The position numbers and the translations under genes are program-made. 64,000 nt of DNA from Eutreptiella sp. 'Long Island Sound 2002' (taxonomy: Eukaryota > Protista > Euglenida), in contig OZ038378.1 in assembly GCA_964036045.1 (NCBI GenBank), positions 6,138,001-6,202,000 on the forward strand, given 5' to 3'. The notes beneath the pieces were generated by a model that worked only from the letters and a program-made list of their open reading frames with translations, did no database searches and had not been told where the DNA came from. Shown piece by piece: positions 1 to 28,842 of the stretch. Each line of letters opens with the position of its first letter. Positions within the stretch are counted from its first letter, which is position 1.

Positions 1-2090
1 TTTCCCCGACGGGGGCACATAACAACCTTTCTCCTCCAAGTTCCCGCGCTCAGTCCATCCTTTGGCGAGCGCAACACAAACCCCCTACCCTCTCCTTCAT
101 GCCTTTGCTGCGCGGACGGGGGTTGTGGGGGATGCGTGGGTGCACGGGGGAGTAGGATGTAGCGGGTGACGTGGGGTGGGCCTCTTACCGTCCCTGGCCG
201 CCCACTTCGTTGCGCGACTCCCCGGACCACCTCAACATAGGAGCGAGTTGTTGTTGGGTTGACGGTGGTGTCCCGTGTTGGGTGGAGGTGCGTAGGGCCC
301 CTTGCTGGCCCCCTTCTCCCGGCTTGGTCCGGGCGCTTGACGACGTGGTGCGTCCCTTTTCTGGTTGAGTTGCTACGCGAGGGAAGGAGTCTCTCCCCTG
401 CTCGCTTCTCAGTGCCAGCACGCTGGGACTTACTGCCGTGGTCACTCCCTTGAGAGCGCGGCCCCCGGTGGGCTTGCGTTGCCACATCGGGCATCTCGCT
501 GAGGCCCCATTGGACCCCCCGAGAAGAACTCGGTGCACGTGTAGAGTTCATTGTTTTGTTTTGGTCGGTGTTGGTCACCACCCTGGCTAAAAAAGTGCGG
601 GGGTTGCCTTCCCCCTGCCTGTTGTTTGGCCTTGCCCCCTACTCCGCCGGCGAGAAAGCTCGCTGCGCGTTGTGGTAGCCGGGGCGCATCCAATGGAGAC
701 TGCGGCGCCGTCTCCATTGGGCATGGGTCCAGAGGCCCGTCCACGGCCGTACCTCAGACCACATCGTTGTGCCTTGTTGCTGTATCACTGGGGGCCGCGG
801 CTCCCCAGTGTGAGTCTCGGTGGCTGGAGGATCCTCTCCTCCCCAGCAGAGCCATGTTGATGGTGTGAGACTCTCCTTTCCATCAGGCTTTTTGCTTTCA
901 TTGTTCTTCTTTCTTCACCCGGCGCCGGGTTGCCCGTCCCTTGGGTTCCTGGGTCGCTTGGCGCCCGGTCTCAGTCCCTCTTGCTTCAAGGCCTAGGCCA
1001 TGCCATGGTGCGTTCCGGGTCGCGCCTTTGTGCTCGGCACTGCGCTGCACAAGCTGCACCCCGTCACCTTGACGCCGTCGGAACTGTGCGACCGTGCGCT
1101 TCCACGCCCTCTTGTCACCCGCGGGTGGGGCTTGTCCGCTTCTCACTTGGCTTCCATCTTCTACTCCTTGTACAGCCGGATGCCTACTTGCTCGGCAATC
1201 ACGTTTGCCCTGTGCAAGTTTTGCATCAACCTGGTTGTGTCCTCCACTGTGAAGTTGATGCCCTCCCCGATGATGAACACCTCCGGCTCCCAACGTCTCA
1301 CCTCCGGCACCCATACCGTTGAGGCTAGCACTCGCACTTTGTACACCTGGTCTGGTGCCAATAAGTACATGTTGCTTCCTGCCTCGGGGTAGTCGGAGAA
1401 CCACCCTCTCCTCCTTTTCTCAGCGAGGATCCGGTCCGCTTGGATGGCGCGGACGTGGTGCGTGTGCCACCGGAACTTCTCATGGAACAAGAGGCGCCGG
1501 GTCCGTTGCGTTCCCGACCCCGGTGGCGGTGCGCCCTTCGGTGTACCCTCACCGTGGCTAGCCCCCATTCCACTCGCATGTTCGGAACGACCGGGCCTTT
1601 TGCTTCCCCACAAGAAAGACCAAAAACCCTCTCCATCGCCCTCCGTTTCTGGGTTTTTGGCACTTGGTGGCGCTTCCTCCGGGGCTGTTTGCCCCGCCGA
1701 ACTTGTGCTGTTGCAGAAATTGGATCGAAAGTATGTGGGGTTGAACTGGTAGTTGGTTGGTTCCTCCGCCGGCCTTGGCGGTGTCACCCCGGGCGCACTT
1801 TTCCATCCCTCGTAGCCGGAGGTCAACCTTTTGAACAGGTGGGTGGCTTTGGCCATGTTGTTCATGTTCTTGTCCGGATGTAACCGCAACACCCACTTTT
1901 TGTATGCGGCCTTCACTTCATCCATGGTGGGTGCACTACCCACTCCAATCTGTTCAAGAAAGCTCCATCCTTCAAAACCCGGGGGCAGCACCTCAACGGG
2001 CTCAACTACCTCCGGGACCACCTTCTTCTTGTCCACTTTTACTCGGCGCATCCCTCCCACTAACAACACTTGCACTTTGTCCTTGTAGAC
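1..2090 (-). mobile_element. Longest copy of the G-run-targeting retroposon family (family A), 5'-truncated, runs off the window start
   Basis: 1-1046 is near-identical to 21645-22746, which continues into the fixed family end at ~21201. The right boundary is a C6G11 run (2091-2107), the G-run-ending pattern seen at the TSDs of other copies. Confidence 0.75.
1161..2075 (-). CDS. Intronless J-domain (DnaJ) ORF inside the retroelement, probably a fragment of a longer disrupted frame
   Basis: Translation contains MDEVKAAYKKWVLRLHPDKN...ATHLFKRLTSGYE (J-domain helix II, HPD, helix III). The frame stays open upstream to the C/G junction (GVYKDKVQVLL...) and there is no strong native start. Confidence 0.7.
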   Translation of the reverse strand: MQVLLVGGMRRVKVDKKKVVPEVVEPVEVLPPGFEGWSFLEQIGVGSAPTMDEVKAAYKKWVLRLHPDKNMNNMAKATHLFKRLTSGYEGWKSAPGVTPPRPAEEPTNYQFNPTYFRSNFCNSTSSAGQTAPEEAPPSAKNPETEGDGEGFWSFLWGSKRPGRSEHASGMGASHGEGTPKGAPPPGSGTQRTRRLLFHEKFRWHTHHVRAIQADRILAEKRRRGWFSDYPEAGSNMYLLAPDQVYKVRVLASTVWVPEVRRWEPEVFIIGEGINFTVEDTTRLMQNLHRANVIAEQVGIRLYKE

Positions 2091-2299
2091 CCCCCCGGGG
2101 GGGGGGGATCTTTGAACAGTATCTCAGACTTCAAATCACCAGTACACCATCGGTATCACTGCAGGTCCACAGTGCTCCACAGTGCTCCTGCATGCTCTTC
2201 ATACCATGGGACAAGATTGCGAACAGGCAACTACACGGGGCCGCCACTTGAGACATTCCCCAAGTTCGATCAGAGAGTGCAAAGCTGAAACTCCCTACA

Positions 2300-4000
2300 A
2301 TTCAGAAACGAGGGATGCAGAGGGCTACAGCTTTGTCATTTAAGGCAAGCTCAGACAAAATGGATGCAATATTTGGTCCAGACTCGTCAGTGTCTTGCTC
2401 CTGCCCTCTCTTCTGGTTCCTGGGGGTTGCCAGAACCCACCAAAAACTTAGTCTTGAGCAGGCGACATGTCTTGAACACGTATTCACGCGTACCACTCAC
2501 AAACATGCGTTCAGCAACCTCTGCCCTTGTCTCAAAGGATCTACACCCTGTGTGCGCCGTGCAGCACACAGTTCAACACTATTACCCAGAAAAGCCCCCT
2601 GCAAAGATAAACCCCAAAAATAGACACATGAAACACGGGGGTCCCCTGTATTGTGCCTTGTGTGTGCCCTACACGCCTTTGCCACCTCCAATGAAGATTA
2701 CAGCACACGACAAAGAATGAGGAAATGCATCTCATTGTGGTGCGCCTCACATGCAATGCAAGAGGCACAGCGGCTCACCAATTCTGGAGACATGATTGCC
2801 ACATCTGGAGTATCAACTGGCTGTGCCCACCACCACAACCCTGAATGGAAAGCATTCAACAGAACCAACCTTGCAACCTAGCATTTCCTACTCCAAAGCC
2901 ACATTGGTCTTTCACTGTGGACAGGATGAGAAACATCATGAGAAGTGAGCCAAGGAGTTGCAAAAGAGCAGGAACCACAGATGATGACATGTTGTCATGA
3001 CATCATGGCATGGATCGCAGTGCTGCCCACGTGTGGATGCCACAATGAAACTGCATTGGTCAAAGCAGGAGGAGGGGTCATCCATGAGAGCATGATGGTC
3101 CTGGTATGGACAACCCAACACATGCAAAGCAAAGGCTGGGGTCATCGACTCCTTCCTCTGCCAAATTGTTGCCAGCAAAAGTTTTGTTGGCCTCCAAATA
3201 TACATGTTCACCCCCTACTTCAGGGGAGCGGTGTCATGGCAAAGCCACAGGCCGTGATGATCTAACATGCTGGTCTGCAAGGAGTGTTTGGCAAAACATC
3301 TCCTAATTTCCAACAGAGGTGAAAACCACCTGTGATGGTGGCAATGGTGACAATGGGGAAGGTGAGCCGCTGATGGCAACACACTCATGGGAGGATGAGA
3401 GGCCCCCAACAGTGGCAGGCACACGTTCCCGTGTGGTGCCTCTCAGGTAAAACACAAAACTAACATATTTGAATCTACAAGGTGCCCTGCTGCCCAATCT
3501 TGGACCCCAACATTCTTGATTCCACCCAAACACAACAATTGGGCACCCATTTGTGAATGCCAAGGCCCCTATGGGGGAGCCCTTGCACTGCGCGCTAACT
3601 TTTTAGACCAAGTTCCCCCTGAAGAGTCCCCAAGCACACCCCTTCCAAACGCCCTTATATCACCCCTGCCTCAGGGGCATGTCCCATTGTAGACCCTGGG
3701 AGACCTCCTTCACTGGGGGCGGGAGGTGGTCCATCTTCCACGAATGGGGGTGGGAGGATGGACCAGGGGTGCTAGGTATGGCTGTCTAGCATAGCCCCGT
3801 TGCCGACCATCTCGGGATGACGGCTTGGTACGTCTTGGCTAGATCAAGCCCGTGAGGTCACCTTCGATTATTGTACTTGAACGTGATATAGCACTTGGAG
3901 AGGATGCTGGATTGTCCCTCGGCCTTGATCATCATCCTGAGGTCCGGCATCAGCCGTGCCTGCTTGGGGTCCCCATGATGGGGGGTTAAGAACAAGGATA
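2300..4000 (-). pseudogene. Decayed coding-like sequence of unknown family (possible old transposon)
   Basis: Short minus-strand protein-like stretches broken by stops (e.g. ...MPDLRMMIKAEGQSSILSKCYITFKYNNRR*, DDPSSCFDQCSFIVASTRGQHCDPCH); no diagnostic motif. Confidence 0.25.
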
Positions 4001-4690: not shown

Positions 4691-6490
4691 GTGCATGCCC
4701 TCTCTGATCAGGATCTGTGTCTTGATCAGGATCTGTGTCCGCGTCATTTCTCTCGGAAAAATTCCTCCAAGCACACTGCTGCACAACCTGTCTTTGTCTC
4801 GACCAGCAATTTGTTGCCAGCAAGACAAAATTACTCTACCACCACCAACACAGCCATCTGCTCTGCACAAAAACAGCTGTTGGCAAGGATGACCGATGAA
4901 CAAATTCAGATTCAGATTGCCCCTGAGCAGAATCTGAATGATGATGCCTGACAAAACCATCGCGGCTCAGACAAAGCCCACGCATCATATGAGAGCCTTG
5001 GTTCCAAGAATGACAGCCTCACCTCAATGACACATCTATGATGTTTTGGACAAAGGGGGGGGGCGAATCTTGGAGCTTTTGTTTCATGAGAAGTGTGCAC
5101 ATGTCCTCCACTTATAGAACGAACCATCAGAAGGGGTTCTAAGTTGACTGCATTTGGGGATGCAAAGTGCGATAAAGGGCATCACACTGCACACACATGA
5201 TGCAGTCCACCAGTTAGAAAATCGTCGATTCCTTTGGTGGAAATCACCTCAAGATTAATCTGTCACCCCTCATGTTGCACTGGCGCGCGTTGTGCATGCA
5301 CTGTGCTGTTGTGCCCCACTATCACCAACGCAACTGCATATTTATCAGAAGAAAGCAGCTGCCCTTGTGCAGCACATGGAGGTTGTATGTTGGAGAAAAT
5401 CACTGCAGGCGTCAAACTAAGGCCTGTAGTGCTGGGTTGGGGAGCAGGGGTGCCCACCCTGCGTGTGAGCCCACTTTACAAATGCCACTGGGATGCTGCG
5501 CCCAGACAAGGCTATGCCTGTGCAGGGTTTGGTGGAGATAAAGCTTTGTGTGATGAACACTGCGTTGTCAATGGAAGCACAGCTCACGTGGATTCATCTA
5601 CCACCCTGCTGTGAGCCACATGGTGTCCAACCTCACTGTCTCATGGATCTCAACAAGAAGACGGCAATGAAGTATGAGCTAGGACCTCTGGTGGTAAGAA
5701 AGACAAGGACCTGCAGGTTCATGATTGGTCAACACCAGCCTGAACAGAGGGAGAGGCAACTTGAATTGAGTTCCGGCATAGTGCACAGCAGCTTCCATGG
5801 CAATAGAGGCACAGGAATTAACTGGTCTCAGTCATGGAACTGCACGAAGTTGCTTTGCTAGTGAAGCGACGAAGCGCGCTACAGCCCAACCAATACCTTG
5901 TCAAACAGCGTGGATGTTGCAACAACAAGGATTCGGGCAGACCCCAGAGCTGTGCCAGAAAGGGATTTGTTCGGCCTGCTTGGTGCCAGTCTGCTCTGCT
6001 GATGTGCAGATACACAACACACGATGCTGCACACAAGCACTGTGCAAAGGACCCACGTGTTTACGCTGAGGGGATTCTTATCAAAATTCCTGCATCTGCT
6101 GGGCCTCACTGGGGAGACATATTGTGGAGGACCTTGCCACGACGTGCAAGCGCACCGTGCGTGCCACGCGTGCACACCTGGCGACAGTGTCACCCGCACT
6201 GTCCGCACTGTCCCAGATGCATTGGCTCGGAAACCACGACTGCATACGGTCTCCTCAAGCAAACCCTTCTCCTCGCAGAGAGGGGGAGCAAGATGTTCCA
6301 AACGGTTCAGAACAAGGGGGCACCATCCGGCAGAGACTGCGCAAATGCAGTGATTCGGACTGTCAGAACTGTCAGAAGCGCGCACACTCAGGAATGTATG
6401 GCAGGGCTGATAAGCACAGTGTCAGCCACACCAAGAGGGCCTCATCAGAATTGGTGCCCGACAACTGCCACTTCCGGCAATTTGACGTGA
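4691..6490 (+). pseudogene. Decayed Cys-rich reading frame
   Basis: ORFs 4691-4951, 5234-5614 and 5834-6490 are in the same frame, separated by scattered stops; Cys/His-rich; no splice structure found. Confidence 0.3.
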
Positions 6491-8132
6491 CAAATTGCAG
6501 GATGCCCTGTCACGCTTGCAAATACGGCGAGGACTATGAGCACAAACGAAAATATCATTCAGCAACTTCATCAGGATATGGAACAACTCTAAGCGCATAG
6601 CCACGCGACCCTACCCCCTTTGATGCTGTGCGGTGGGTGCCTTGGCCAAAGCGTTTGTTGTTGTGGAACTGAAGAAAATAACAGCGTCACGGGTCTGAGC
6701 AGCATCTGAACAACGAAGGCTCTGCTGCGTGAGAACAACTTTTACATTGTCTGGGTAAAATACGGTGAAATGAGATCCTCTAGTTCGCGCTCAGGTGTCC
6801 CCATTTCCAAGTGGCAAAAACACCATCCAAAATACAGTGCCCACAATCACAACACGCCGTGATGCTTGAACACCGCAGAATACATCATTTGGTGCCGTGA
6901 TCCATCAATTAAACGCTTCAGATATTGTCAGCGAAAGCATAGGGTAAGGGAGATATACGCGGGCCTCACGTTTGAACATCGCTCATGTTTGACTGTCACA
7001 TGCAATACTCTGACATAAAGGAGACTGTGGTGGATTTCCCCCCATCATTTCCTCCCAACAAGCAATTCAGAGTGCAACACAGCCCCAAACACTCAGGGCT
7101 GAGGATACAGTGCTCCAACATAAATGACCATGTGCATACACTTCCATCATTTGACCAGTTGCTTGTCCATGGAACTTAAAATTTCAAATGGAAAAACATT
7201 GGGGTTCAGGAAGCAAAGAAGCCTCAGGTTCACAGGTATCCTACCTGTTCAACTCCCTGAGACACTACAACGGGCCAGACCCACCCCATCCAGGTTAGCG
7301 TCATTGACCGCTGCTTGTCATGTGTGTACATGGCACCACTACAGCTAGCGTATGAATACAACTTGAGCCCATCTGGTTGTCCTTGGTACTGGTACACGTG
7401 AGGAGCCTATTTATCTGTTATGCATAAGTGTCCATACAGACCGTCACTCGAACGAGTGTGGGTCGCTTCCCCCTCGGGGCAGGGATCCCTTGTGACTCAT
7501 CCTGGAATATTGGGGTTCAGTAAGCGGAGGAGTCTGCAGGAACCGAGGCTACAAGCAAACAAATTGGACATCGAAGCAGGTCCAATCCATATTTCTCTTT
7601 CCTCCCTCATGACAAGAAAACCCGCATGAGGCCAACCCAGAACCACAACTGATGCACAGGATGTTGCCATCATACTCAGCAGCCATTTGCAACCCGGCCC
7701 CATGTAAGCAAATGGATATTTGCTGTTTACTCTGCTGACTCTTGGCAGCAGCAGACACTTCACATGTAAATGCAATACGCTGAACATGACGGCCCAAGGA
7801 AGGAAGGAAAGCATATTTAGGAGCTCAACCCTTGGACCATTGCCCTCGTGTGCTCTCCCAATTGCTTGAGAGTAACCACATGGACGGTTCAACACAAAAT
7901 TCTGCAGGAAAATTGTGGCTGGACTGCTCCAGAGACTTCGCTGGTAAAGCCACACTCAGCAATGAAGTGGTGGGATTTTCTGCCAAAAGAGACTGCACTC
8001 CAATCGGTGGCTGGTACAGTGAAACTGATATATACACCTGATATGTTATCAAAAGCCAAAGCAAATCCTGAGAGGGGGGGGTTTACCCTAGAGAAAAGGG
8101 CGTGCTGGTTGCGTAGAGAATGAGCTTCCTGC

Positions 8133-8378
8133 ATAAATCCATGTAGTGTTTTAGATGTGCACATGGTGTTTGAGAGAAGTAGCGCGTGGCGTTTCTGTAG
8201 GTATCCGGCGCCCGTGTCAAAGTGTGCTAGCGAGGAAGCCTCGGTTGCACATGTCATAAATCCATGTGGTGTTTTAGATGTGCACATGGTGTTTGAGAGA
8301 AGTAGCGCGTGGCGTTTCTGTAGGTATCCGGCGCCCGTGTCAAAGTGTGCTAGCGAGGAAGCCTCGGTTGCACATGTC
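8133..8378. repeat. Tandem duplication, 2 x 123 bp
   Basis: ATAAATCCATGT...GGTTGCACATGTC at 8133-8255 and 8256-8378, nearly identical. Confidence 0.9.
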
Positions 8379-9154
8379 AGAGCTGGTGTAGGTAGCTGTG
8401 ACTACAGAAAGTACAGGACCCGAAGGGCCATGTACCGCTTATGCCAATCCCTGCTGTCATCCGACATCACAATGCAAAAGCATCTGCCATCGTTTGCAAG
8501 TAAATAAAAAAGAGGAAAGAAAGCATTTTGAGGAGCATAGATCTTGGAGAAAAAACTCGGTGTTGCCCATCCACTGTCAGGTGTCATTGACACCGTCTAG
8601 CGTTTTGGAGCAGGGATAGTACGGAGCATTTTTGCTGTTACCAACAATTTAGGCCTGCCCCTGCAATCGGATCAAACAAATGTGCCAATTCATCACACCC
8701 CTGCCGTGCAGCGCACACACAGCATGGTGCATGCAGCTTCAAGGTTACTGCACCACCGTCATACTTCAGCTGATGACAGTTTCTCAATGGCAGTCTGTGG
8801 CACTTCTTCAAGGTGTTGCCAATGCTCTCGGGTGAGAAGAATGTCTCGTGCGTGCGACTGATGAGTGCACCTGTGTGTGTGGCATGCAGGAGCCTGAAAA
8901 AAGCCTTCTGGAGGAGGAGGAGGAGGAGATGCGGTCCCCCGGTAGGGCGCCCCCGCGGCACATCCCCATGGTGCCCGCCGGCCCTCATCGGTCTGGCCGG
9001 CGACCGAGAGGGGGGTGCTGTCCCGACCCGTCCGGCTAAGCATCATGGCGGCGGCTCTCCTCTTCGTCTCCTCCCCTTGTCCCCTGGCCCGCACAACGCG
9101 CATGCACTCCCGCCCTACACGTTGCTGGATCCCCCCAGGGGCACGGAATGGGGG

Positions 9155-9268
9155 TTTTGGCATGACGCCATGGTGTGATGATCTCGTCTGCAGCTGGCGG
9201 CGCCTACTGGCCGATCGCCATTCGCTGCCCTTCCCTTGGACCCTTTCCCTCCATAGGCGGTGGTGCCC
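9155..9268 (-). mobile_element. Truncated family A retroposon copy with 12-bp TSD
   Basis: TTTTGGCATGACGCC...GGTGGTGCCC flanked by ACGGAATGGGGG at 9143-9154 and 9276-9287 (7-bp filler). Confidence 0.85.
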
Positions 9269-12200
9269 GGACGGAACGGAATGGGGGGCGAGGCAGAGCG
9301 CCGGCTCCACTTCCGGCACGGTCCGCCACCCCCCCACGGGAAAGGGGACGCCGTCTCACGGGTGTGGGCCCTTAGCCCGCCGGGTACTACTGACTGGGCG
9401 GCGTTTGGCCGGCAGGTCTCGGGGGCTTGGTCCGTAGCCCGATCCCCCCCCCCCCCCCGTACCGCACAGCACTCCTGCCGGAGTCATCCGCGCGTTCTGG
9501 CCTGTTGGATCTGTTGGGCCTCTGGCCACCATCATTTGTCCTATGCGCAACCAGATGAAAAGCCAACTCTACTGTGGGAAAGTAGACAGACGCCCACGGA
9601 GTGCCCGTGGTGCTTCATTCGCCAACTAAACCAACGTGAGGCAATGCCACTGCAATGTAATCCTGTGGTGCACCCTTTTACACACCAGCAGTACGTTACA
9701 ATAAGACTGGTTAAGGGCTCGTGTACTACATCATCCGAAAGTATTGGATGGCGCAATATCCTGGTGAATTTGCACGAATGGCTCAAAATTAATACATCGA
9801 AATGCCCCACAGTCTGAGTGTTCATGCGTTGCTGCAATCGGGGGTATACGCTTCTCACTCTGCAAAATCCAACAGCTGCATATGCGCTTTCAGGGTAGGA
9901 TCACACGATCACACGATCACACGATCAAATGATGAAGCAAAGACAGACATGGATGACTCTGATGCCGCAGGACCACAAGAGAAAAATTTGCAGTGCACTG
10001 CTCTTGAGACTTTTAAAGCGGGTGCTTCGTGTTTGTGAAACGGTACGGCTCTGTCCGCAGCCACTTGACCAAACACCAGGGGAGCAGGCCTATACCATGC
10101 AGAGAGGCTCTGAAGGTGGACGGCTATGCACTGTCTGCGTACTGCGTGCACATATGTTGCTGGAACCCATACTGCATATCCATGAAAACTGGGATCTCCC
10201 CACAAGAAAATGCCCCAAACCACAATTCACCATCCTTTTCATCTTCTCCGGAGGCATCCTCATCTGCCCATGACCCATGCTGCCGGTTTATACCCAGAGC
10301 AGAGTGGGGCTTTGAGTGGGTTCCTGATACCTCGACCAGTGATGTGCCAGTGGAGGCATGTTCCCCCTGCATATTTACAAACTTATGGCGTGATATGCAG
10401 TGGCAAACAGACGACAACTTGTGCCTGCACAACCGAGCACGGCAGAGCACAGCATGCGCTGTACCTCATCTGCCTGCAAGTGGCAGCGCACAGGCACAGC
10501 CATCACGTACCCAGGGAGAGTGACCTTCCCTGGACGCTTGCACTCCAGTGGCGCCTGCAAGTATTCCACTTGTTTACAGCAAAAAAAACCTTCTGTTTGT
10601 GTACACGCACAAAATGGTTCCGTAAAATTGGCACGCGCCAGTACCTGCATCATTATCCCAAGCGGCAAGAAAGCCTCAATGGAACACTGTACTGTAACCC
10701 AGACAATGTTGTGGCGACATGTTTTCTATTGCATCAGTTGATGGCAAAGACTCTGTGATGAACGCTGACAGGCTACACTACAACTGTACTAGCTTTTTGG
10801 TTCTGCAGTGACACTTGCGTTCTACTGCGATATTTCGTTTTGTTGCCACATGACTGAAGAAGATGGTACTCTCTCTTGAACGAGCTGTTGGGGCAAGCCA
10901 GCCACCATGCGTCAAAATTCAAATGACTAGTTCCTGCACTACTGACCTTTTTCTTGGCAGAGCCCCACAGTCACAAGGGACGGCAGAACAGCTCCGAGCT
11001 GTGCATCAGACCGGTCTGCCATTGTCTGCATGGTGCGAAACACATATCACTGCAGTGAGACTTCCATCCAATGCAGAAAGAAGTTCCTCAGAGGGTTTTC
11101 GGGGGAATGACAGAGGTGAGAGCAGAGGCTGGTGTCAATTGGTTTTGAAATGTGTTGGGCAAGGGGTTCTTTTCTGTGTTTGTCTTGTCAGTTCGTGCAA
11201 TTTTCTTGCCATCTGGGATGCTTTTTGGCAGAATGTGTGGTGGTCAGGAGCCCCTTTCCCAACACCTTGAGTCCCACCCCTGGTCCAGCCAGCCCATACC
11301 AACGACCTGCAAAACACACCAGTAGTGAGAGGATTGGTCCTGATTCGCGATTTTGTATTACAAACTCGCGAATTGGAGTTGTCAGGTAGTCTCAGGCTAT
11401 CAAGTTGGAGCATTTTTAACCTGAAGCACCTCCTTCCGTCAACACATATTTTCTTGTGTGCCCTGTCGCAGTATTTTCTTCGGCTTCGCTTGCACTGTCC
11501 TGGAATTTCTGGATTGTTCTGGTACCGCAGGCAGGTTTTCAGGCAGGAAAAGTTGGACAAGCCAACAATTGCATTCAGTACTGAGACTGGGGGCTGCAGA
11601 CATCAAGAACTGCATGCACTACCAACAGCCAAAAAAGAGGGGCAGGGGCTGCACGGTTGTGAATATTTCAATGGTGCCGTTCCTATGGGCTGACAAGAGG
11701 ATTGTGTGAGCATTGCATGCGGTCCAGCATGTGACATCCTTTGTCAAGTCAAACGTGCTGCGTCAACGCGCCTGGGCTACGTGACTTCACAACCCTCCGA
11801 CAACAATGCAGCAATTTCCCTTGTTGGGGGCAAAAATTGAGGTCGGTCAGACCAACGGCGACCACATCCATTTGCAAATCAGCGGCGAATGGCTCAGCTG
11901 GGCACTGCTGATCGCAGAGAAGGTACACTGATATGTTGAATACCAGGATGGACTGGCACCTACCTGCTGGTAGCATTGTTGAAAACCGCTTTTTTTTATT
12001 TGCAGAAACGACAACAGAGGAAACAAGGGGCTGGAACTCAGAACACAAAGGGAAGACGAGTGCTGTAAAGGTCGGACTTGCTATTAAGAAACCACTTTAT
12101 AAGGCATGAGGCTCCATTTTGAACTTGATAAGTAAGAAAATGGCCTAGATTTAGAAATGTTTGCGTAGAACACGCTGTGAGGCTCGGCCTTTGAAATATG

Positions 12201-13915
12201 TAGACTGTTGGGCCTCAATCCCAAAAGGTGGTTTCTTATCAACAAGTCCGACCTGTAATGGGGATGTTTGGACACAATCATGATTCACGGCTGCAACAGT
12301 TGGCAAGTTACGGTCTACCATGTACAGTATGGTCGTGCATCTGGGCTGAGGGTGGGGCTGGATGCAACGTAATGCAGAGGCAATGCGGTGCACAAATTAG
12401 GCATGCAGGTCTGTGCACACCAGCGAGCGCTTGCGGGGCATCGAGCAGCCTTGTGCACCGACAGGAATCGAGTACCACGCCGTGACAGGACTTGGCTCCA
12501 CGCACGTTGTCTGCAGATGCTGAACGTGCTCTCTAACATGCCTCTGACAATGTGCTTCTCCGGCAAGCACGGAGGCTAGTGATCGTAACGTTAGCACGGT
12601 GGCTGTGACCACGACTTGTGGTGGTGGGCAGAGTGCGGAACACGCCCCTCATGCCTCTCAAAAAGGGCGCTGCATGCCTGCATGGTCCGGCAAAACGTTG
12701 CAAACCATTTGGACTTGTGACTCAATACCAGCAGGGTTGTGTTGTTGTCTGCGGCTGGCGGCGCCAGTTGGCCGATCGCCACTTACCGCTGCCCCTCCCT
12801 TCCCTTTCCTTGAATGAAGGTGAGCTTGAATGAAGCTTCCTTGAATGAACGAGGCAGGGGTGGGGCAGGGGAAAGATGCAGCATGGCCAAAATTACAGAT
12901 CCCCACCCCATTTGTGTCCCCTGAAGGTCTTGTGCAGTGCAATTTCAACTTTCCGACTGGGCCGGTTGTTGGACAACAATGACCGAACTTTGTTCTTCGT
13001 TGTTGAGGCACAGTGTTTGGATGGAGCACTTGAGACCGTTGATGCAGACTTGGAGGAACGACAGCACAATGGCCAACCCCAGAGAGTTGTGTGTGGTCTT
13101 GGCCCAGGGAAATTGTTTGATCTACAAATGGCTGACAATGGCAGCGCTGTTCAAGATAAGCAACCAATCCAACTCCGAAAAAGGAAACCCAAGAAATGGT
13201 GTTGCAGTGGTATGACTCACACAGACCACTTGGCCAGATGGACAGTGCAGCCACTGGGGAAGAGCAGGGCCGGGAGCGTCGAGAGTGTACGCCGTTATGG
13301 GCCGCGGCGGGGGATGGGGGCATGCATGGCATGACGCCTGAGAGGATTGCTGTCTGAAGCTGCCGCCTTGTGGCCTCTCGGCCCATTGGCAGAAAGGGGT
13401 GGGGGTGGGGGGTTGATAAAAGTGTTCCTGTGCATCCTTCACAAAACAGGCGAGAGGAATGCAGCTGCCAAGTACTTTTGTCAGCCGGTACATTTCAAAC
13501 AGCAGCTTCACGGTGCCCCAAACAAATGGGGGCCGCAACCCAACCCAAACGATGTGCTACCAATCAGGCGGTCATGCAGCAGACGGCAGTTTAAAAAGAA
13601 GATGGATCGCTGATGAAATAAAATGGAGTAGCAACACCCAAACTTTTCTGGTGCTCATTCCCTTCACTTCTTGCTACAAACGGGCCCACTGCAACGTCAA
13701 AACAATCCATCAAACCAGAAAAATTGGATCAACTCCAGTGCAACTACAATGCAACTACAAATCAAGGGTTCCTCCAGCGAACAACTTCCCATGACCGTCG
13801 TCGCCAACTGCCATGCGTCATGGGTCCAATGCTTTTCAACGGATTCCATTCCAAAGCCCGAGCGGAGGTGGGCAGGAGTGGGGGGTTGGAGACAAGCCCT
13901 GGAGAAGGTGTGCAG

Positions 13916-14010
13916 GTGTGTGTGTGTGTGTGTGTGTGTGCAACGCAACAGCAACACAGACTGGCATGCTCAACTGAACATGGACTGGAAAGAATGAGGA
14001 ATGCCCTGAG

Positions 14011-14041
<31 letters not shown>

Positions 14042-14116
14042 CAACAACATCAACACAGCTCAACATCAACACAACCATGCTCAACTGAACATGGACTGGA
14101 AAGAATGAGGAATGCA
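13916..14116. repeat. Direct duplication of a (GT)n-headed unit
   Basis: (GT)n at 13916-13940 and 14010-14036, each followed by a shared ...GCTCAACTGAACATGGACTGGAAAGAATGAGGAATGC. Confidence 0.85.
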
Positions 14117-19838: not shown

Positions 19839-21865
19839 GGGGGGGGGGTTTTGGCATGACGCCATGGTGTGATGATCTCGTCTGCAGCTGGCGGCGCCTA
19901 CTGGCCGATCGCCATTCGCTGCCCTTCCCTTGGACCCTTTCCCTCCATAGGCGGTGGTGCCCATCAGCTTCTCACCACCCTTTGACCTTCCTCTTCCTCC
20001 TTGCCCTAACCTTCCCTCTCCCCTCCCCTTTCCCTTCCCTTGGCCTTTCCCTCTGTAGGCCACCGTGCCCATCGGCCTCACCACACTCCTTCCCTTCCCT
20101 TTCCCTTGGTCGGTTGTGCCAACGGAGCCCCCGGACTTGCCCTGTTTCACTTCTCTGCGTCGAGTCCACGCAGAGGAAGGCAAATGCCTTCGCCGTTGGC
20201 CAGGTGCGTCCAAGCGGCCATCCCAAGCCGGCGGTGAGGTACCTCTCCCCAACGGCGGCTGGTGGGCCCTGGGATGGCCACTTGCGGGGTCGTTTCCCCG
20301 ACGGGGGCACATAACAACCTTTCTCCTCCAAGTTCCCGCGCTCAGTCCGACTTTTGGCGAGCGCAACACAAACCCCCTACCCTCTCCTTCATGCCTTTGC
20401 TGCGCGGACGGGGGTTGTGGGGGATGCGTGGGTGCACGGGGGAGTAGGATGTAGTGGGAGACGTGGGGTGGGCCTCTTACCGTCGCTGGCCGCCCACTTC
20501 GTTGCGCGACTCCCTAGGGGGGGGTTTTGGCATGACGCCATGGTGTGATGATCTCGTCTGCAGCTGGCGGCGCCTACTGGCCGATCGCCATTCGCTGCCC
20601 TTCCCTTGGACCCTTTCCCTCCATAGGCGGTGGTGCCCATCAGCTTCTCACCACCCTTTGACCTTCCTCTTCCTCCTTGCCCTAACCTTCCCTCTCCCCT
20701 CCCCTTTCCCTTCCCTTGGCCTTTCCCTCTGTAGGCCACCGTGCCCATCGGCCTCACCACACTCCTTCCCTTCCCTTTCCCTTGGTCGGTTGTGCCAACG
20801 GAGCCCCCGGACTTGCCCTGTTTCACTTCTCTGCGTCGAGTCCACGCAGAGGAAGGCAAATGCCTTCGCCGTTGGCCAGGTGCGTCCAAGCGGCCATCCC
20901 AAGCCGGCGGTGAGGTACCTCTCCCCAACGGCGGCTGGTGGGCCCTGGGATGGCCACTTGCGGGGTCGTTTCCCCGACGGGGGCACATAACAACCTTTCT
21001 CCTCCAAGATCCCGCGCTCAGTCCATCCTTTGGCGAGCGCAACACAAACCCCCTACCCTCTCCTTCATGCCTTTGCTGCGCGGACGGGGGTTGTGGGGGA
21101 TGCGTGGGTGCACGGGGGAGTAGGATGTAGTGGAAGACGTGGGGTGGGCCTCTTACCGTCGCTGGCCGCCCACTTCGTTGCGCGACTCCCTGGGGGGGGG
21201 TTTTGGCATGACGCCATGGTGTGATGATCTCGTCTGCAGCTGGCGGCGCCTACTGGCCGATCGCCATTCGCTGCCCTTCCCTTGGACCCTTTCCCTCCAT
21301 AGGCGGTGGTGCCCATCGGCTTCTCACCACCCTTTGACCTTCCTCTTCCTCCCTGCCCTAACCTTCCCTCTCCCCTCCCCTTTCCCTTCCCTTGGCCTTT
21401 CCCTCCGTGGGCCATGGTGCCCATCGGCCTCACCACACTCCTTCCCTTCCCTTTCCCTTGGTCGGTTGTGCCAACGGAGCCCCCGGACTTGCCCTGTTTC
21501 ACTTCTCTGCGTCGAGTCCACGCAGAGGAAGGCAAATGCCTTCGCCGTTGGCCAGGTGCGTCCAAGCGGCCATCCCAAGCCGGCGGTGAAGTACCTCTCC
21601 CCAACGGCGGCTGGTGGGCCCTGGGATGGCCACTTGCGGGGTCGTTTCCCCGACGGGGGCACATAACAACCTTTCTCCTCCAAGTTCCCGCGCTCAGTCC
21701 ATCCTTTGGCGAGCGCAACACAAACCCCCTACCCTCTCCTTCATGCCTTTGCTGCGCGGACGGGGGTTGTGGGGGATGCGTGGGTGCACGGGGGAGTAGG
21801 ATGTAGCGGGTGACGTGGGGTGGGCCTCTTACTGTCGCTGGCCGCCCACTTCGTTGCGCGACTCC
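19839..21865 (-). repeat. Tandem array of three 676-bp family A terminal units
   Basis: GGCATGACGCC starts at 19853, 20529 and 21205 (exact 676-bp period); units differ by a few SNPs. Confidence 0.95.
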
Positions 21866-22746
21866 CCGGACCACCTCAACATAGGAGCGAGTTGTTGTTG
21901 GGTTGACGGTGGTGTCCCGTGTTGGGTGGAGGTGCGTAGGGCCCCTTGCTGGCCCCCTTCTCCCGGCTTGGTCCGGGCGCTTGACGACGTGGTGCGTCCC
22001 TTTTCTGGTTGAGTCGCTACGCGAGGGAAGGAGTCTCTCCCCTGCTCGCTTCTCAGTGCCAGCACGCTGGGACTTACTGCCGTGGTCACTCCCTTGAGAG
22101 CGCAGCCCCCGGTGGGCTTGCGTTGCCACATCGGGCATCTCGCTGAGGCCCCATTGGACCCCCCGAGAAGCACTCGGTGCACGTGTAGACTTCATTGTTT
22201 TGTTTTGGTCGGTGTTGGTCACCACCCTGGCTAAAAAAGTGCGGGGGTTGCCTTCCCCCTGCCTGTTGTTTGGCCTTGCCCCCTACTCCGCCGGCGAGAA
22301 AGCTCGCTGCGCGTTGTGGTAGCCGGGGCCTTGCCCCCTACTCCGCCGGCGAGAAAGCTCGCTGCGCGTTGTGGTAGCCGGGGCGCATCCAATGGAGACT
22401 GCGGCGCCGTCTCCATTGGGCATGGGTCCAGAGGCCCGTCCACGGCCGTACCTCAGACCACATCGTTGTGCCTTGTTGCTGTATCACTGGGGGCCGCGGC
22501 TCCCCAGTGTGAGTCTCGGTGGCTGGAGGATCTTCTCCTCCCCAGCAGAGCCATGTTGATGGTGTGAGACTCTCCTTTCCATCAGGCATTTTGCTTTCAT
22601 TGTTCTTCCTTCTCCTCCCGGCGCCGGGTTGCCCGTCCCTTGGGTTCCTGGGTCGCTTGGCGCCCGGTCTCAGTCCCTCTTGCTTCAAGGCCTAGGCCAT
22701 GCCATGGTGCGTTCCGGGTCGCGCCTTTGTGCTCGGCACTGCGCTG
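21201..22746 (-). mobile_element. Second long, 5'-truncated family A copy
   Basis: Matches 1-1046, with an internal ~60-bp duplication near 22270-22380; carries the open frame 22225-21065 (VTNTDQ...RSYVEVVRG...). Confidence 0.85.
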
Positions 22747-22774
22747 AACCCCTCCCTGGGGGGGGGGGGGGGTT

Positions 22775-23377
22775 GGCATGACGCCATGGTGTGATGATCT
22801 CGTCTGCAGCTGGCGGCGCCTACTGGCCGATCGCCATTCGCTGCCCTTCCCTTGGACCCTTTCCCTCCATAGGCGGTGGTGCCCATCGGCTTCTCACCAC
22901 CCTTTGACCTTCCTCTTCCTCCCTGCCCTAACCTTCCCTCTCCCCTTCCCTTCCCTTCCCTTGGCCTTTCCCTCCATAGGCCGCAGTGCCCATCGGCCTC
23001 ACACCACTCCTTCCCTTCCCATTCCCTTGGTCGGTTGTGCCAACGAAGAGGAGGGAGAGAAGAGGGGGGGGTTTTGGCATGACGCCATGGTGTGATGATG
23101 TTGTCTGCAGCTGGCGGCGCCTACTGGCCGATCGCCATTCGCTGCCCTTCCCTTGGACCCTTTCCCTCCATAGGCGGTGGTGCCCATCGGCTTCTCACCA
23201 CCCTTTGACCTTCCTCTTCCTCCTTTCCCTAACCTTCCCTCTCCCCTCCCCTTTCCCTTCCCTTGGCCTTTCCCTCTGTGGGCCGCAGTGCCCATCGGCC
23301 TCACCACACTCCTTCCCTTCCCATTCCCTTGGTCGTCTGTGCCAACGGAGCCCCCGGACTTGCCCTGTTTCACTTCT
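22775..23377 (-). mobile_element. Two further truncated family A copies (22775-23044; 23076-23377)
   Basis: Each starts G-run + GGCATGACGCC; the second is flanked by GAGAGAAG+G-run at 23055-23071 and 23378-23394. Confidence 0.85.
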
Positions 23378-28032: not shown

Positions 28033-28151
28033 GGCTGTGGCCCAGTGACATCCCGCGAGTGCGCCGTGAACCGTTCCCTCCTCCGGACTTTGTGCGGCAA
28101 CGGAGCAGATTGTGGAGCAAGCCATGGTGCAGTCACAGTACAGGGGGGGGG

Positions 28152-28842
28152 TTTGGCATGACGCCATGGTGCACAGGGGGGGTTTTGGCATGACGCCATG
28201 GTGTGATGATCTCGTCTGCAGCTGGCGGCGCCTACTGGCCGATCGCCATTCGCTGCCCTTCCCTTGGACCCTTTCCCTCCATAGGCGGTGGTGCCCATCA
28301 GCTTCTCACCACCCTTTGACCTTCCTCTTCCTCCTTGCCCTAACCTTCCCTCTCCCCTCCCCTTTCCCTTCCCTTGGCCTTTCCCTCTGTAGGCCACCGT
28401 GCCCATCGGCCTCACCACACTCCTTCCCTTCCCTTTCCCTTGGTCGGTTGTGCCAACGGAGCCCCCGGACTTGCCCTGTTTCACTTCTCTGCGTCGAGTC
28501 CACGCAGAGGAAGGCAAATGCCTTCGCCGTTGGCCAGGTGCGTCCAAGCGGCCATCCCAAGCCGGCGGTGAGGTACCTCTCCCCAACGGCGGCTGGTGGG
28601 CCCTGGGATGGCCACTTGCGGGGTCGTTTCCCCGACGGGGGCACATAACAACCTTTCTCCTCCAAGATCCCGCGCTCAGTCCATCCTTTGGCGAGCGCAA
28701 CACAAACCCCCTACCCTCTCCTTCATGCCTTTGCTGCGCGGACGGGGGTTGTGGGGGATGCGTGGGTGCACGGGGTAGTAGGATGTAGCGGGTGACGTGG
28801 GGTGGGCCTCTTACCGTCGCTGGCCGCCCACTTCGTTGCGCG
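28152..28842 (-). mobile_element. Family A micro-insertion plus one ~660-bp unit at the same target
   Basis: GGCATGACGCC at 28155 and 28187; TGCACAGGGGGGG at 28170-28182 and 28844-28856; ACAGGGGGGG also at 28140-28149. Confidence 0.88.

What the first reader, a model, noticed from the sequence alone, without database searches (positions are those of the whole stretch)
1..2107. Retroposon carrying an HPD J-domain within a long, 5'-truncated reading frame
Seen: the J-domain ORF is intronless and its frame is open right up to the C/G junction at ~2090, so it looks cut mid-protein. The same frame continues past five stops (1161, 1143, 993, 915, 639; the 915 stop is absent in the 22.6 kb copy) and is then open from 638 to 1. 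It includes GCSLC...HH and SYVEVV (242-225). The downstream sequence is the body of family A. Known: J-domains recruit Hsp70 through HPD, and SY(A/V)xVV-like motifs are common in LINE ORF1/gag-like proteins. Inference: the full-length element encodes an Hsp70-recruiting protein, which I do not know as standard non-LTR cargo. No RT lies between this ORF and the 3' end, so any RT must be upstream of the truncation or supplied in trans.
Basis: partly seen in the sequence, partly recalled or inferred. Interest (0 to 1): 0.8.

Follow-up and report, generated by a model that had tools for sequence, protein, structure and literature searches.

The report
Truncated Penelope-like retrotransposon with J-domain
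This stretch is a dead, front-truncated copy of a very abundant Penelope-like jumping gene. Its single giant protein ends in a ubiquitin-removing protease and an Hsp70-recruiting J-domain, an add-on I found in no paper, though this scan had already met the family elsewhere in the genome.

Summary
On the minus strand, 1161-2089 is an open frame with a genuine J-domain (HPD at 1872-1880), cut at the C/G run at 2090-2107. The other 29 copies fetched continue upstream.

The classification does not hold. Natural longer copies show one ~8.6 kb element with a single ~2,170-residue polyprotein. Its order is N-terminal GIY-YIG nuclease, CxC motif, telomerase-like reverse transcriptase, CCCH finger, AMSH-type JAMM deubiquitinase, PHD-like finger, J-domain and an orphan C-terminal region. 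A ~1.6 kb 3' UTR ends in CCAAAA(C)n.

Partial tandem copies, frequent 5' truncation, insertion at (C)n with C-run duplications and no hammerhead match the Chlamys group of Penelope-like elements, not a LINE.

The "continued frame" in 1-1160 is T-poor non-coding sequence. Four of its five stops are fixed in all copies.

Diverged related families (best named hit: a Euglena gracilis transcript) keep a J-domain with invariant HPDK but carry an OTU protease instead of JAMM.

This scan found the same family before on other DNA of this genome (s1-192976, s1-206471, s1-195161, s1-216499). The window adds only a dead copy and a clean (C)n(G)n target duplication.

Verdict: a new variant of a known kind. 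The chaperone and deubiquitinase functions are inferred, not shown.

The parts
2090..2107 (.). Target-site run (C)11(G)7, read on the minus strand, directly upstream of the truncated 5' end. It matches the (C)7(G)8 that follows the element's CCAAAA tail 450 bp left of the window (L032:9535-9550). It is a target-site duplication or microhomology at a (C)n target.
   Evidence: Three other copies in the window show duplications of a C-run plus 6-7 bp.
1161..2089 (-). Remnant of the polyprotein ORF: the last 309 codons plus the TAG stop at 1161-1163. It begins inside the region upstream of the J-domain. It is 99% identical to other copies, with two private amino-acid changes (I>M, P>T).
   Evidence: 26 of 29 other copies keep this segment intact.
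1809..1946 (-). J-domain (helix II, HPD, helix III). HPD codons are at 1872-1880.
   Evidence: Pfam DnaJ 33.5 bits. DNAJB8 E 1e-6. HPDK is invariant in 8 diverged families.
1164..1532 (-). C-terminal ~120-residue region of the polyprotein with no recognisable family (orphan). A Pro/Ser/Gly-rich linker at 1533-1808 precedes it.
   Evidence: No Pfam hit. Atlas feature search best score 0.78. Relatives found only within the same family. Structure model failed, pLDDT 31.8.
1..1160 (-). 3' UTR of the element, about 1.6 kb in all. It continues 450 bp beyond the window's left edge and ends in ...CATGCCAAAA(C)n. It is T-poor (12% T), so long open frames arise by composition.
19840..23377 (-). Head-to-tail array of five 5'-truncated copies of the same element's 3' end. 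Each starts just after the C-run that ends the previous copy. Two are exact 675-bp units.
28143..28842 (-). A 667-bp 3' fragment of the same element flanked by (C)n TGTGCA on both sides. A ~30-47 bp mini-copy of the tail follows.
9150..9268 (-). A 119-bp 3' fragment of the same element flanked by (C)n ATTCCGT on both sides.

Best explanation
Window 1-2089 (minus strand), plus 450 bp to the left of the window, is a dead 2,540-bp 5'-truncated insertion of an ~8.6 kb Penelope-like retrotransposon of the N-terminal-endonuclease (Chlamys) type. SHOWN: full-length copies encode one polyprotein of about 2,170 residues. Its parts, in order, are a GIY-YIG nuclease, a CxC motif, a telomerase-like RT, a CCCH finger, an AMSH-type JAMM/MPN+ metalloprotease with a complete E..HxH(x7)SxxD motif, a PHD-like Cys/His finger, a J-domain with HPD, and an orphan C-terminal region. 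A 1.6 kb 3' UTR ends in CCAAAA(C)n. Copies are 99% alike, mostly 5'-truncated, often head-to-tail, and sit at (C)n tracts with duplication of the C-run plus 6-7 bp. INFERRED, insertion (probability about 0.7): the GIY-YIG nuclease nicks the bottom strand at the edge of a (G)n/(C)n tract. The RNA's terminal C's pair with the exposed G's. The RT copies the RNA by target-primed reverse transcription. It frequently stops early, here 5.5 kb short, inside the protein. INFERRED, add-on (probability about 0.45): the J-domain stimulates host Hsp70 in cis, to fold or load the very large TERT-like RT onto its RNA or to remodel the RNP at the target. By analogy, and from my own knowledge, telomerase and hepadnaviral RT need Hsp70/Hsp40/Hsp90 for RNP assembly, and the polyomavirus T antigen has a J-domain. 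The neighbouring deubiquitinase would strip ubiquitin from the element's protein or from chromatin to avoid degradation or silencing. The window copy has no start, nuclease or RT and cannot do any of this.
For: 5' truncation and family size. Upstream continuation in natural copies: c10 (L002), c1 (L033/L034), c2 (L003/L036). P0001 is a 1,593-aa continuous RT-to-J product, 98% identical. A full-length copy lies at L037:5497-14074, with only one in-frame stop and one late frameshift. The nuclease and JAMM halves lie 3,644 bp apart in at least 7 further loci, and the RT-JAMM junction is in at least 40 copies. RT: the model has pLDDT 79.7. Foldseek ranks 1-15 are TERT, E 3e-8 to 6e-5, followed by group II intron RT. 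Motifs A (DFVAMYPS), B (GFGMGL) and C (YRFVDD) are conserved in 16 relatives. GIY-YIG: 46% identity, E 5e-36, to the N-terminus of the E. gracilis transcript protein P0004, which continues into CxC and RT. All 30 top atlas feature hits are GIY-YIG, scores 0.93-0.94. JAMM: Pfam JAB 27.9 and Prok-JAB 29.8 bits; AMSH-like sst2 E 1.9e-5. J-domain. It is retained with invariant HPDK in relatives at 22-31% J-domain identity and 40-45% RT-region identity. Codon periodicity is present in the ORFs and absent in the 3' region. (C)n targets and duplications. Partial tandems share the identical junction tail|ACATACCACGCC at two independent loci, and L037 has an inverted fragment. No hammerhead. These features match the description of Chlamys in PMC8557442.
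Against: No phylogeny with reference Chlamys or Naiad RTs was made, so clade placement rests on architecture. Pfam detects neither the RT nor the GIY-YIG. The nuclease call rests on motif pattern, language-model features and homology to one transcript. I saw no copy with a fully intact polyprotein; each long copy read has at least one lesion. Chaperone recruitment and deubiquitination are untested. The window ORF could not be modelled (pLDDT 31.8). Synonymous excess among copies is weak: 24 synonymous to 34 non-synonymous variant sites, against 0.225 synonymous expected at random. RNA-library contigs cover the element, but DNA carry-over from a ~1000-copy repeat is not excluded.
Confidence: 0.88

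Rival explanations
1. A non-LTR (LINE-like) retroposon whose ORF1/gag-like protein carries a J-domain, with RT upstream or supplied in trans.
For: It has 5' truncation, head-to-tail arrays and a homopolymer-like tail. No RT lies between the J-domain and the 3' end.
Against: The RT is in the same polyprotein upstream. It matches TERT best. The nuclease is an N-terminal GIY-YIG. A CxC motif and partial tandems with a fixed junction are present. The supposed gag-like motifs lie in non-coding sequence.
Confidence: 0.03
2. A one-off processed chimera: a host DnaJ mRNA fragment captured by a retroelement's 3' end and amplified as a non-autonomous passenger.
For: The J-domain ORF is intronless and ends in a long non-coding 3' part. 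One RT-less derivative exists (c1).
Against: The J-domain is in frame within the RT polyprotein in at least 40 copies. It also occurs, with invariant HPDK, in families only 40-45% identical in the RT region and from other organisms. The RT-less junction is confined to one tandem pair at C1:5.19 Mb.
Confidence: 0.02
3. The element is a Chlamys-type PLE, but the J-domain and JAMM domains are inert relics of an old capture and have no role in retrotransposition.
For: No functional data exist. The J-domain is short: Pfam covers positions 7-51 of 63, so helix IV is not matched. The selection signal among copies is weak.
Against: HPDK is invariant and all JAMM catalytic residues are intact. The protease-plus-J arrangement persists across deep divergence even though the protease class differs (JAMM here, OTU in relatives). 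That pattern argues for selection on the function rather than on inherited sequence.
Confidence: 0.2
4. The 3' region (window 1-1160 and beyond) encodes a second protein, or a former continuation of the polyprotein read by stop-codon readthrough.
For: The same frame as the main ORF has only 5 stops in 1.6 kb, against 16 and 11 in the other two frames. Its last stretch is 363 codons, reached by 0.6% of shuffles.
Against: Base composition is flat across codon positions, unlike both real ORFs. The translation is Gly/Arg/Pro/Thr/Ser-rich with no family hit. Four stops are fixed in 29 of 29 copies. The 675-676-bp tandem units are not a multiple of three.
Confidence: 0.05

Closest known systems
Chlamys Penelope-like elements (N-terminal GIY-YIG PLEs; Craig et al. 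2021, PMC8557442)
   Same: Both have an N-terminal GIY-YIG without the CCHH finger, a CxC motif before the RT and a TERT-like RT with a long motif A-B spacing (IFD position). Both show partial tandem (pLTR-like) and inverted insertions, frequent 5' truncation, (C)n targets, no canonical hammerhead and lengths up to ~8 kb. PHD fingers are known accessory domains there. One Chara family has a C-terminal Josephin-like (deubiquitinase-type) extension.
   Different: The host here appears to be a euglenid, a group not mentioned in that paper. The words Euglen-, DnaJ, OTU and ubiquitin do not occur in it. The C-terminal extension here is about 1,000 residues and holds a JAMM/MPN+ protease and a J-domain, neither of which is described for PLEs in the papers I could search.
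Transposable elements with ubiquitin-like-protein proteases (Dualen non-LTR cysteine protease; OTU in Ginger transposons and Helentrons)
   Same: These are also mobile-element proteins fused to a deubiquitinase-type protease, presumed to counter host protein turnover (PMC8557442; titles and abstracts listed).
   Different: Those are cysteine proteases in other element classes. Here the protease is a JAMM metalloprotease closest to AMSH/sst2, and it is paired with a J-domain.
Polyomavirus large T antigen J-domain; chaperone dependence of telomerase and hepadnavirus RT (from my own knowledge, not tested here)
   Same: In these cases a replication protein brings or needs an Hsp70 co-chaperone function, and an HPDK motif lies in a short J-domain.
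   Different: There is no sequence relationship beyond the J-domain fold. Those systems are viral or cellular, not a retrotransposon polyprotein.

Membership tests
Chlamys-type Penelope-like element | GIY-YIG endonuclease N-terminal to the RT, with conserved R, E and N residues and without the CCHH finger | tested here: met
   L037:6276-6563 reads AYMMF..AYAGV..ARLKKRW..REGFW..GFNEG upstream of the RT. It is 46% identical to the P0004 N-terminus. Atlas top hits are all GIY-YIG at 0.93-0.94. Pfam itself gives no hit. No Cys pair lies inside the core, by reading.
Chlamys-type Penelope-like element | CxC motif between EN and RT | tested here: met
   SCNCF is at L037:7158-7172. CxC..D.W.GH.C is conserved in the aligned relatives.
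Chlamys-type Penelope-like element | RT related to telomerase RT, with an insertion at the IFD position | tested here: met
   Foldseek ranks 1-15 are TERT. About 90 residues with helices lie between motif A and motif B. The IFD was not delimited residue by residue.
Chlamys-type Penelope-like element | Partial tandem (pseudo-LTR) and inverted arrangements, with frequent 5' truncation | tested here: met
   A 3' fragment precedes the 5' end, with an identical junction, at C1:5.19 Mb and in L037. L037 also has an inverted piece at 2656-3430. First-look candidates number 1088 for the 3' part against 139-202 for internal parts.
Chlamys-type Penelope-like element | Insertion bias for (C)n or (CA)n | tested here: met
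   C-runs lie at the 3' ends of all 30 copies and at the 5' junctions of truncated copies. Duplications of a C-run plus 6-7 bp were seen.
Chlamys-type Penelope-like element | No canonical hammerhead ribozyme | tested here: met
   Rfam at E<=1 on L002, L034, L036 and L037:2600-14200, and at gathering threshold on the window, gave no hammerhead.
Chlamys-type Penelope-like element | RT groups with Chlamys/Naiad in a phylogeny | not tested
J-domain (DnaJ/Hsp40) proteins | Helix II, HPD loop and helix III matching the family profile above threshold | tested here: met
   Pfam PF00226 scores 33.5 bits against 27.8. PDB J-domains match down to E 1e-6. HPD is at 1872-1880.
J-domain (DnaJ/Hsp40) proteins | Stimulates Hsp70 ATPase | not testable with these tools
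   This needs biochemistry. A complex prediction was not attempted because the monomer model failed and the host Hsp70 could not be fetched.
JAMM/MPN+ deubiquitinases (AMSH type) | E ... HxH x7 S xx D metal-binding and catalytic motif within an MPN fold | tested here: met
   KETMG...WIHTHPGHVPVLSALD. Pfam JAB 27.9 and Prok-JAB 29.8 bits are above their cut-offs. AMSH-like sst2 E 1.9e-5. This domain lies in longer copies, not in the window copy.
Non-LTR (LINE) retrotransposon | LINE-type RT with an APE or REL endonuclease, and an ORF1/gag-like protein | tested here: not met
   The RT is TERT-like. The nuclease is GIY-YIG. There is a single polyprotein. The region proposed as gag-like is non-coding.
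PHD finger / KOW-like repeats (named in earlier notes) | Profile match to PHD or KOW | tested here: inconclusive
   No Pfam PHD or KOW hit at E<=1 in this family. Only a Cys/His pattern, CGLCC..C..GHWMHLKC..CRC, is visible. The two putative barrel repeats do not match each other by BLASTP. A relative, P0005, has a true PHD hit at 24.5 bits.

The most novel reading that the evidence does not exclude
Euglenid Chlamys-type PLEs have evolved a C-terminal proteostasis module, a deubiquitinase of interchangeable class (JAMM or OTU) followed by a J-domain, that is needed for retrotransposition. The J-domain would load host Hsp70 in cis onto the telomerase-like RT or RNP, and the protease would protect the polyprotein or open the target chromatin. 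This would be the first retrotransposon-encoded Hsp70 co-chaperone.
Probability: 0.4. Interest if true: 0.75.

Novelty: new variant of a known kind. Interest (0 to 1): 0.55.

Why it matters
Penelope-like elements are the closest relatives of telomerase, and their mechanism is poorly understood. A family that hard-wires an Hsp70 co-chaperone and a deubiquitinase into the RT polyprotein suggests that chaperone-assisted RNP assembly and escape from ubiquitin-dependent turnover limit retrotransposition. It also offers natural variants (JAMM versus OTU, with or without PHD) with which to test this. The finding extends Chlamys-type PLEs to what appears to be a euglenid, where they are young (about 99% identity) and very abundant. 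The window copy itself is ordinary debris of that family. Its value is the clean (C)n(G)n target duplication.

Tried and rejected
1. Pfam on the 934-aa RT ORF and on the N-terminal nuclease region gave no RT or GIY-YIG hit. phmmer and a profile against PDB sequences did not reach TERT either; the profile found only the OTU domains of relatives. Structure comparison was needed.
2. The AlphaFold model of the window's 309-aa ORF, built on an 8-row within-family alignment, failed (pLDDT 31.8). No fold search of the J-domain/C-terminal part was made.
3. The atlas feature search of the C-terminal 123 residues gave a best score of 0.78, so no lead.
4. The word search with the 548-aa PHD-to-end protein found only same-family proteins, 58-99% identical. 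The C-terminal region stays orphan.
5. Rfam found no hammerhead or any other credible RNA family.
6. BLASTP of the two putative KOW/SH3-like repeats against each other was not significant.
7. Synonymous/non-synonymous counts among 30 copies were 24 to 34 variant sites. This is only suggestive, because most differences arose after insertion.
8. Reads: estuary metatranscriptome contigs cover the UTR and the J-domain region, and one runs past 2089 into the upstream sequence of longer copies. The single-copy flank has no depth even in the DNA run, so transcription is not shown.
The full-length copy came from an ENA contig instead.
Frames were followed on natural copies only.
11. The complex prediction with Hsp70 and the large representative protein search were not run. 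The first would have rested on a failed monomer model, and the second was not needed for any claim.
Full report
**1. What is in the window**

On the minus strand, 1161-2075 is listed as a 304-aa ORF, and its frame stays open to 2090.
- Pfam finds a DnaJ domain above its curated cut-off: 33.5 against 27.8 bits, residues 49-94 of the 309-aa translation.
- phmmer against PDB sequences finds human DNAJB8 at E 1e-6 and more than thirty other J-domains.
- HPD is encoded at 1872-1880.
- Directly upstream, the minus strand reads GATC(C)11(G)7 and then the element.

So is the long open stretch from 638 to 1.

**2. Repeat family and truncation**

A search of the window's own 2.28 Gb genome with 1-2107 gave 1088 first-look candidates. 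All 40 scored were 99-100% identical, and all ended at query position 2089.

Aligning 29 fetched copies gave three results:
- The 3' end is common to all. It lies 450 bp left of the window (L032:9550) and reads ...CATGCCAAAA followed by at least five C's.
- Every other copy continues upstream of 2089 with one shared sequence.
- The window copy is therefore a 2,540-bp 5'-truncated insertion.

**3. The longer copies**

I followed natural copies upstream and built no consensus.
- **Copy c10 (L002)** is truncated 718 bp further up, again just after a C-run. There the frame is open from the first base through a Cys/His finger, the J-domain and the stop, 548 codons in all.
- **Copy c2 (L003/L036)** adds a JAB/MPN domain. 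Pfam JAB scores 27.9 and Prok-JAB 29.8 bits. The closest solved relatives are AMSH-like proteases, E 1.9e-5, and the full E..HxH(x7)SxxD motif is present. Upstream, in the same frame and separated by a single stop in this copy, is a 934-aa ORF with CxC, DFVAMYPS, GFGMGL and YRFVDD motifs and a CCCH finger.
- **P0001**, a database protein 98% identical, reads straight through that stop and spans RT to J-domain in 1,593 residues.
- **ENA contig L037** holds a full-length copy at 5497-14074. It runs from 5' UTR through the GIY-YIG-like domain (6276-6563), CxC (7158), RT motifs A-C (7995-8411), CCCH (8910), JAMM (10125-10316), Cys/His finger (10851-11003), HPD (11799-11816) and the normal stop (about 12516) to the 3' UTR. 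It is interrupted only by one in-frame stop at 7944-7946 and one late frameshift.
- **Genome counts:** the nuclease and JAMM halves lie 3,644 bp apart in at least seven further loci, and the RT-JAMM junction is present in at least 40 copies. RT-bearing copies are therefore the norm.
- **Copy c1 at C1:5.19 Mb** has an in-frame 3.3 kb deletion that joins the nuclease directly to JAMM. That junction is confined to this one tandem pair.

**4. What kind of retroelement it is**

Pfam does not recognise the RT or the nuclease, so other tests were needed.
- **RT:** an AlphaFold model of the RT region, built on 16 relatives, has pLDDT 79.7 and pTM 0.73. Its 15 best Foldseek matches in the PDB are all telomerase TERT, E 3e-8 to 6e-5, followed by group II intron RT.
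- **Nuclease:** the N-terminal domain is 46% identical (E 5e-36) to the N-terminus of a Euglena gracilis transcript protein (P0004), which continues into CxC and RT. In the atlas feature search all top hits are GIY-YIG nucleases, scores 0.93-0.94.
- **Arrangement:** at two independent loci the 5' end is preceded by a partial 3' copy with the identical junction ...CCAAAACCCCC|ACATACCACGCC. L037 also has an inverted fragment.
- **Ribozyme:** no hammerhead is found.

These are the features that Craig et al. 2021 (PMC8557442) list for Chlamys, the N-terminal-endonuclease Penelope-like elements. That paper names targeted insertion at (C)n, PHD accessory fingers and one Chara family with a Josephin-like C-terminal extension. 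The element is therefore not a LINE-type retroposon.

**5. Target site**
- The window copy is flanked by (C)11(G)7 on the 5' side and by (C)7(G)8 after CCAAAA on the 3' side.
- Three other fragments in the window show the same rule: a C-run plus 6-7 bp is duplicated. The duplicated bases are ATTCCGT at 9150-9268, TGTGCA at 28176-28842 and TTCTCTC near 23377.
- At 19840-23377, five truncated copies sit head to tail, each starting just after the previous copy's C-run.
- My inference is that the bottom strand is nicked at the edge of the G-run, the RNA's terminal C's pair with it, and reverse transcription starts there.

**6. The 3' region is not coding**
- The real ORFs have strong codon-position periodicity. 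For example, T is 0.13/0.22/0.10 and G is 0.39/0.26/0.40 at positions 1/2/3.
- The 3' open frame is flat: T is 0.10/0.12/0.14.
- Its translation is Gly/Arg/Pro/Thr/Ser-rich and matches no family.
- The sequence has 12% T, so shuffles already give open frames of 184 +/- 51 codons. The observed 363 is reached by 0.6% of shuffles.
- The stops at 1161, 1143, 993 and 639 are fixed in 29 of 29 copies.
- GCSLC..HH and SYVEVV therefore carry no weight.

**7. Is the J-domain an integral, selected part?**
- 26 of 29 other copies keep the 309-codon segment intact.
- Among the 30 copies (the 29 plus the window copy), variant sites are 24 synonymous to 34 non-synonymous, against 22.5% synonymous expected at random. 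This is suggestive only.
- The stronger argument is comparative. Relatives share 40-45% identity over the RT region. They come from E. gracilis and from unnamed ENA/JGI assemblies. They carry a Pfam-significant J-domain C-terminal to a protease, but there the protease is OTU rather than JAMM.
- In an alignment of eight such J-domains, 22-31% identical to this one, HPDK is invariant.
- Retention of "deubiquitinase plus J-domain" while the protease class differs points to selection on function.

**8. Mechanism**

What is shown is the architecture, the intact catalytic and HPD motifs, and the target duplications. What is inferred is the function.
- The J-domain would activate host Hsp70 on or near the roughly 2,170-residue polyprotein, most plausibly to assemble the TERT-like RT with its RNA or to remodel the complex.
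- The JAMM protease would remove ubiquitin from the element's protein or from chromatin.
- The analogies to telomerase and hepadnaviral RT chaperone dependence and to the T-antigen J-domain come from my own knowledge and were not tested.
- The window copy lacks a start codon, nuclease, RT and protease, so it is inert.

**9. Expression and host**
- The stretch is held by estuary metagenomes (up to 0.87 of its words) and by five estuary metatranscriptome libraries (0.08-0.57).
- RNA-library contigs lie on the UTR and on the J-domain region. One continues past 2089 into the upstream sequence of longer copies.
- The single-copy flank has no depth even in the DNA run, so DNA carry-over of a high-copy repeat cannot be excluded.
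The best cross-species relative with a name is from Euglena gracilis.

**10. Novelty**
- In the open literature I could search, I found no report of a J-domain or a JAMM protease in a retrotransposon polyprotein, and none of PLEs in euglenids.
- Deubiquitinase-type cysteine proteases in transposons, and a Josephin-like tail in a Chara Chlamys element, are known.
- This scan had already reported the same family at other places of this genome (s1-192976, s1-206471, s1-195161, s1-216499). I re-derived the architecture independently and agree with those reports. I could not confirm the "KOW" label, and "PHD" holds only as a Cys/His pattern.

Noticed in passing
window 19840-23377 (- strand): Five head-to-tail 5'-truncated 3' ends of the same element. 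Two are exact 675-bp units starting at the same element position. Each unit begins right after the previous C-run, sometimes with a short CT-rich or AGGGAGG filler.
   Followed up: partly
L033/L034 (G000:C1:5186001-5206000): A tandem pair of 5,289-bp units in which an in-frame ~3.3 kb deletion removes CxC, RT and CCCH and joins the GIY-YIG domain directly to the JAMM domain. Among the copies scored, the junction occurs only here.
   Followed up: yes
L037:5028-7946: The assembly's gene caller made a 972-aa 'protein' that starts inside the 3' UTR of the upstream partial copy and runs through the tail and 5' UTR into the nuclease. This is an artefact of stop-poor, T-poor sequence.
   Followed up: partly
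L037:2656-3430: An inverted 775-bp piece of the element's 3' region abuts a truncated direct copy. This is a tandem/inverted complex insertion of the kind described for PLEs.
   Followed up: no
protein P0018: A relative of the RT-OTU polyprotein is deposited as a hypothetical protein of the carnivorous plant Genlisea aurea. It may be contamination of that assembly by a euglenid or another protist.
   Followed up: no
L036:1952-2560 (-) and P0001 residues ~480-640: Between CCCH and JAMM lie two copies of an acidic motif, D(T/S)DSD(V/I)SIL(T/R)WLQGL, about 110 residues apart. Its function is unknown.
   Followed up: no
window 28143-28176 (- strand): A mini-copy of only the last ~30-47 bases of the element (CCATGGCGTCATGCCAAA(C)9) is inserted right behind another copy's tail.
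   Followed up: no
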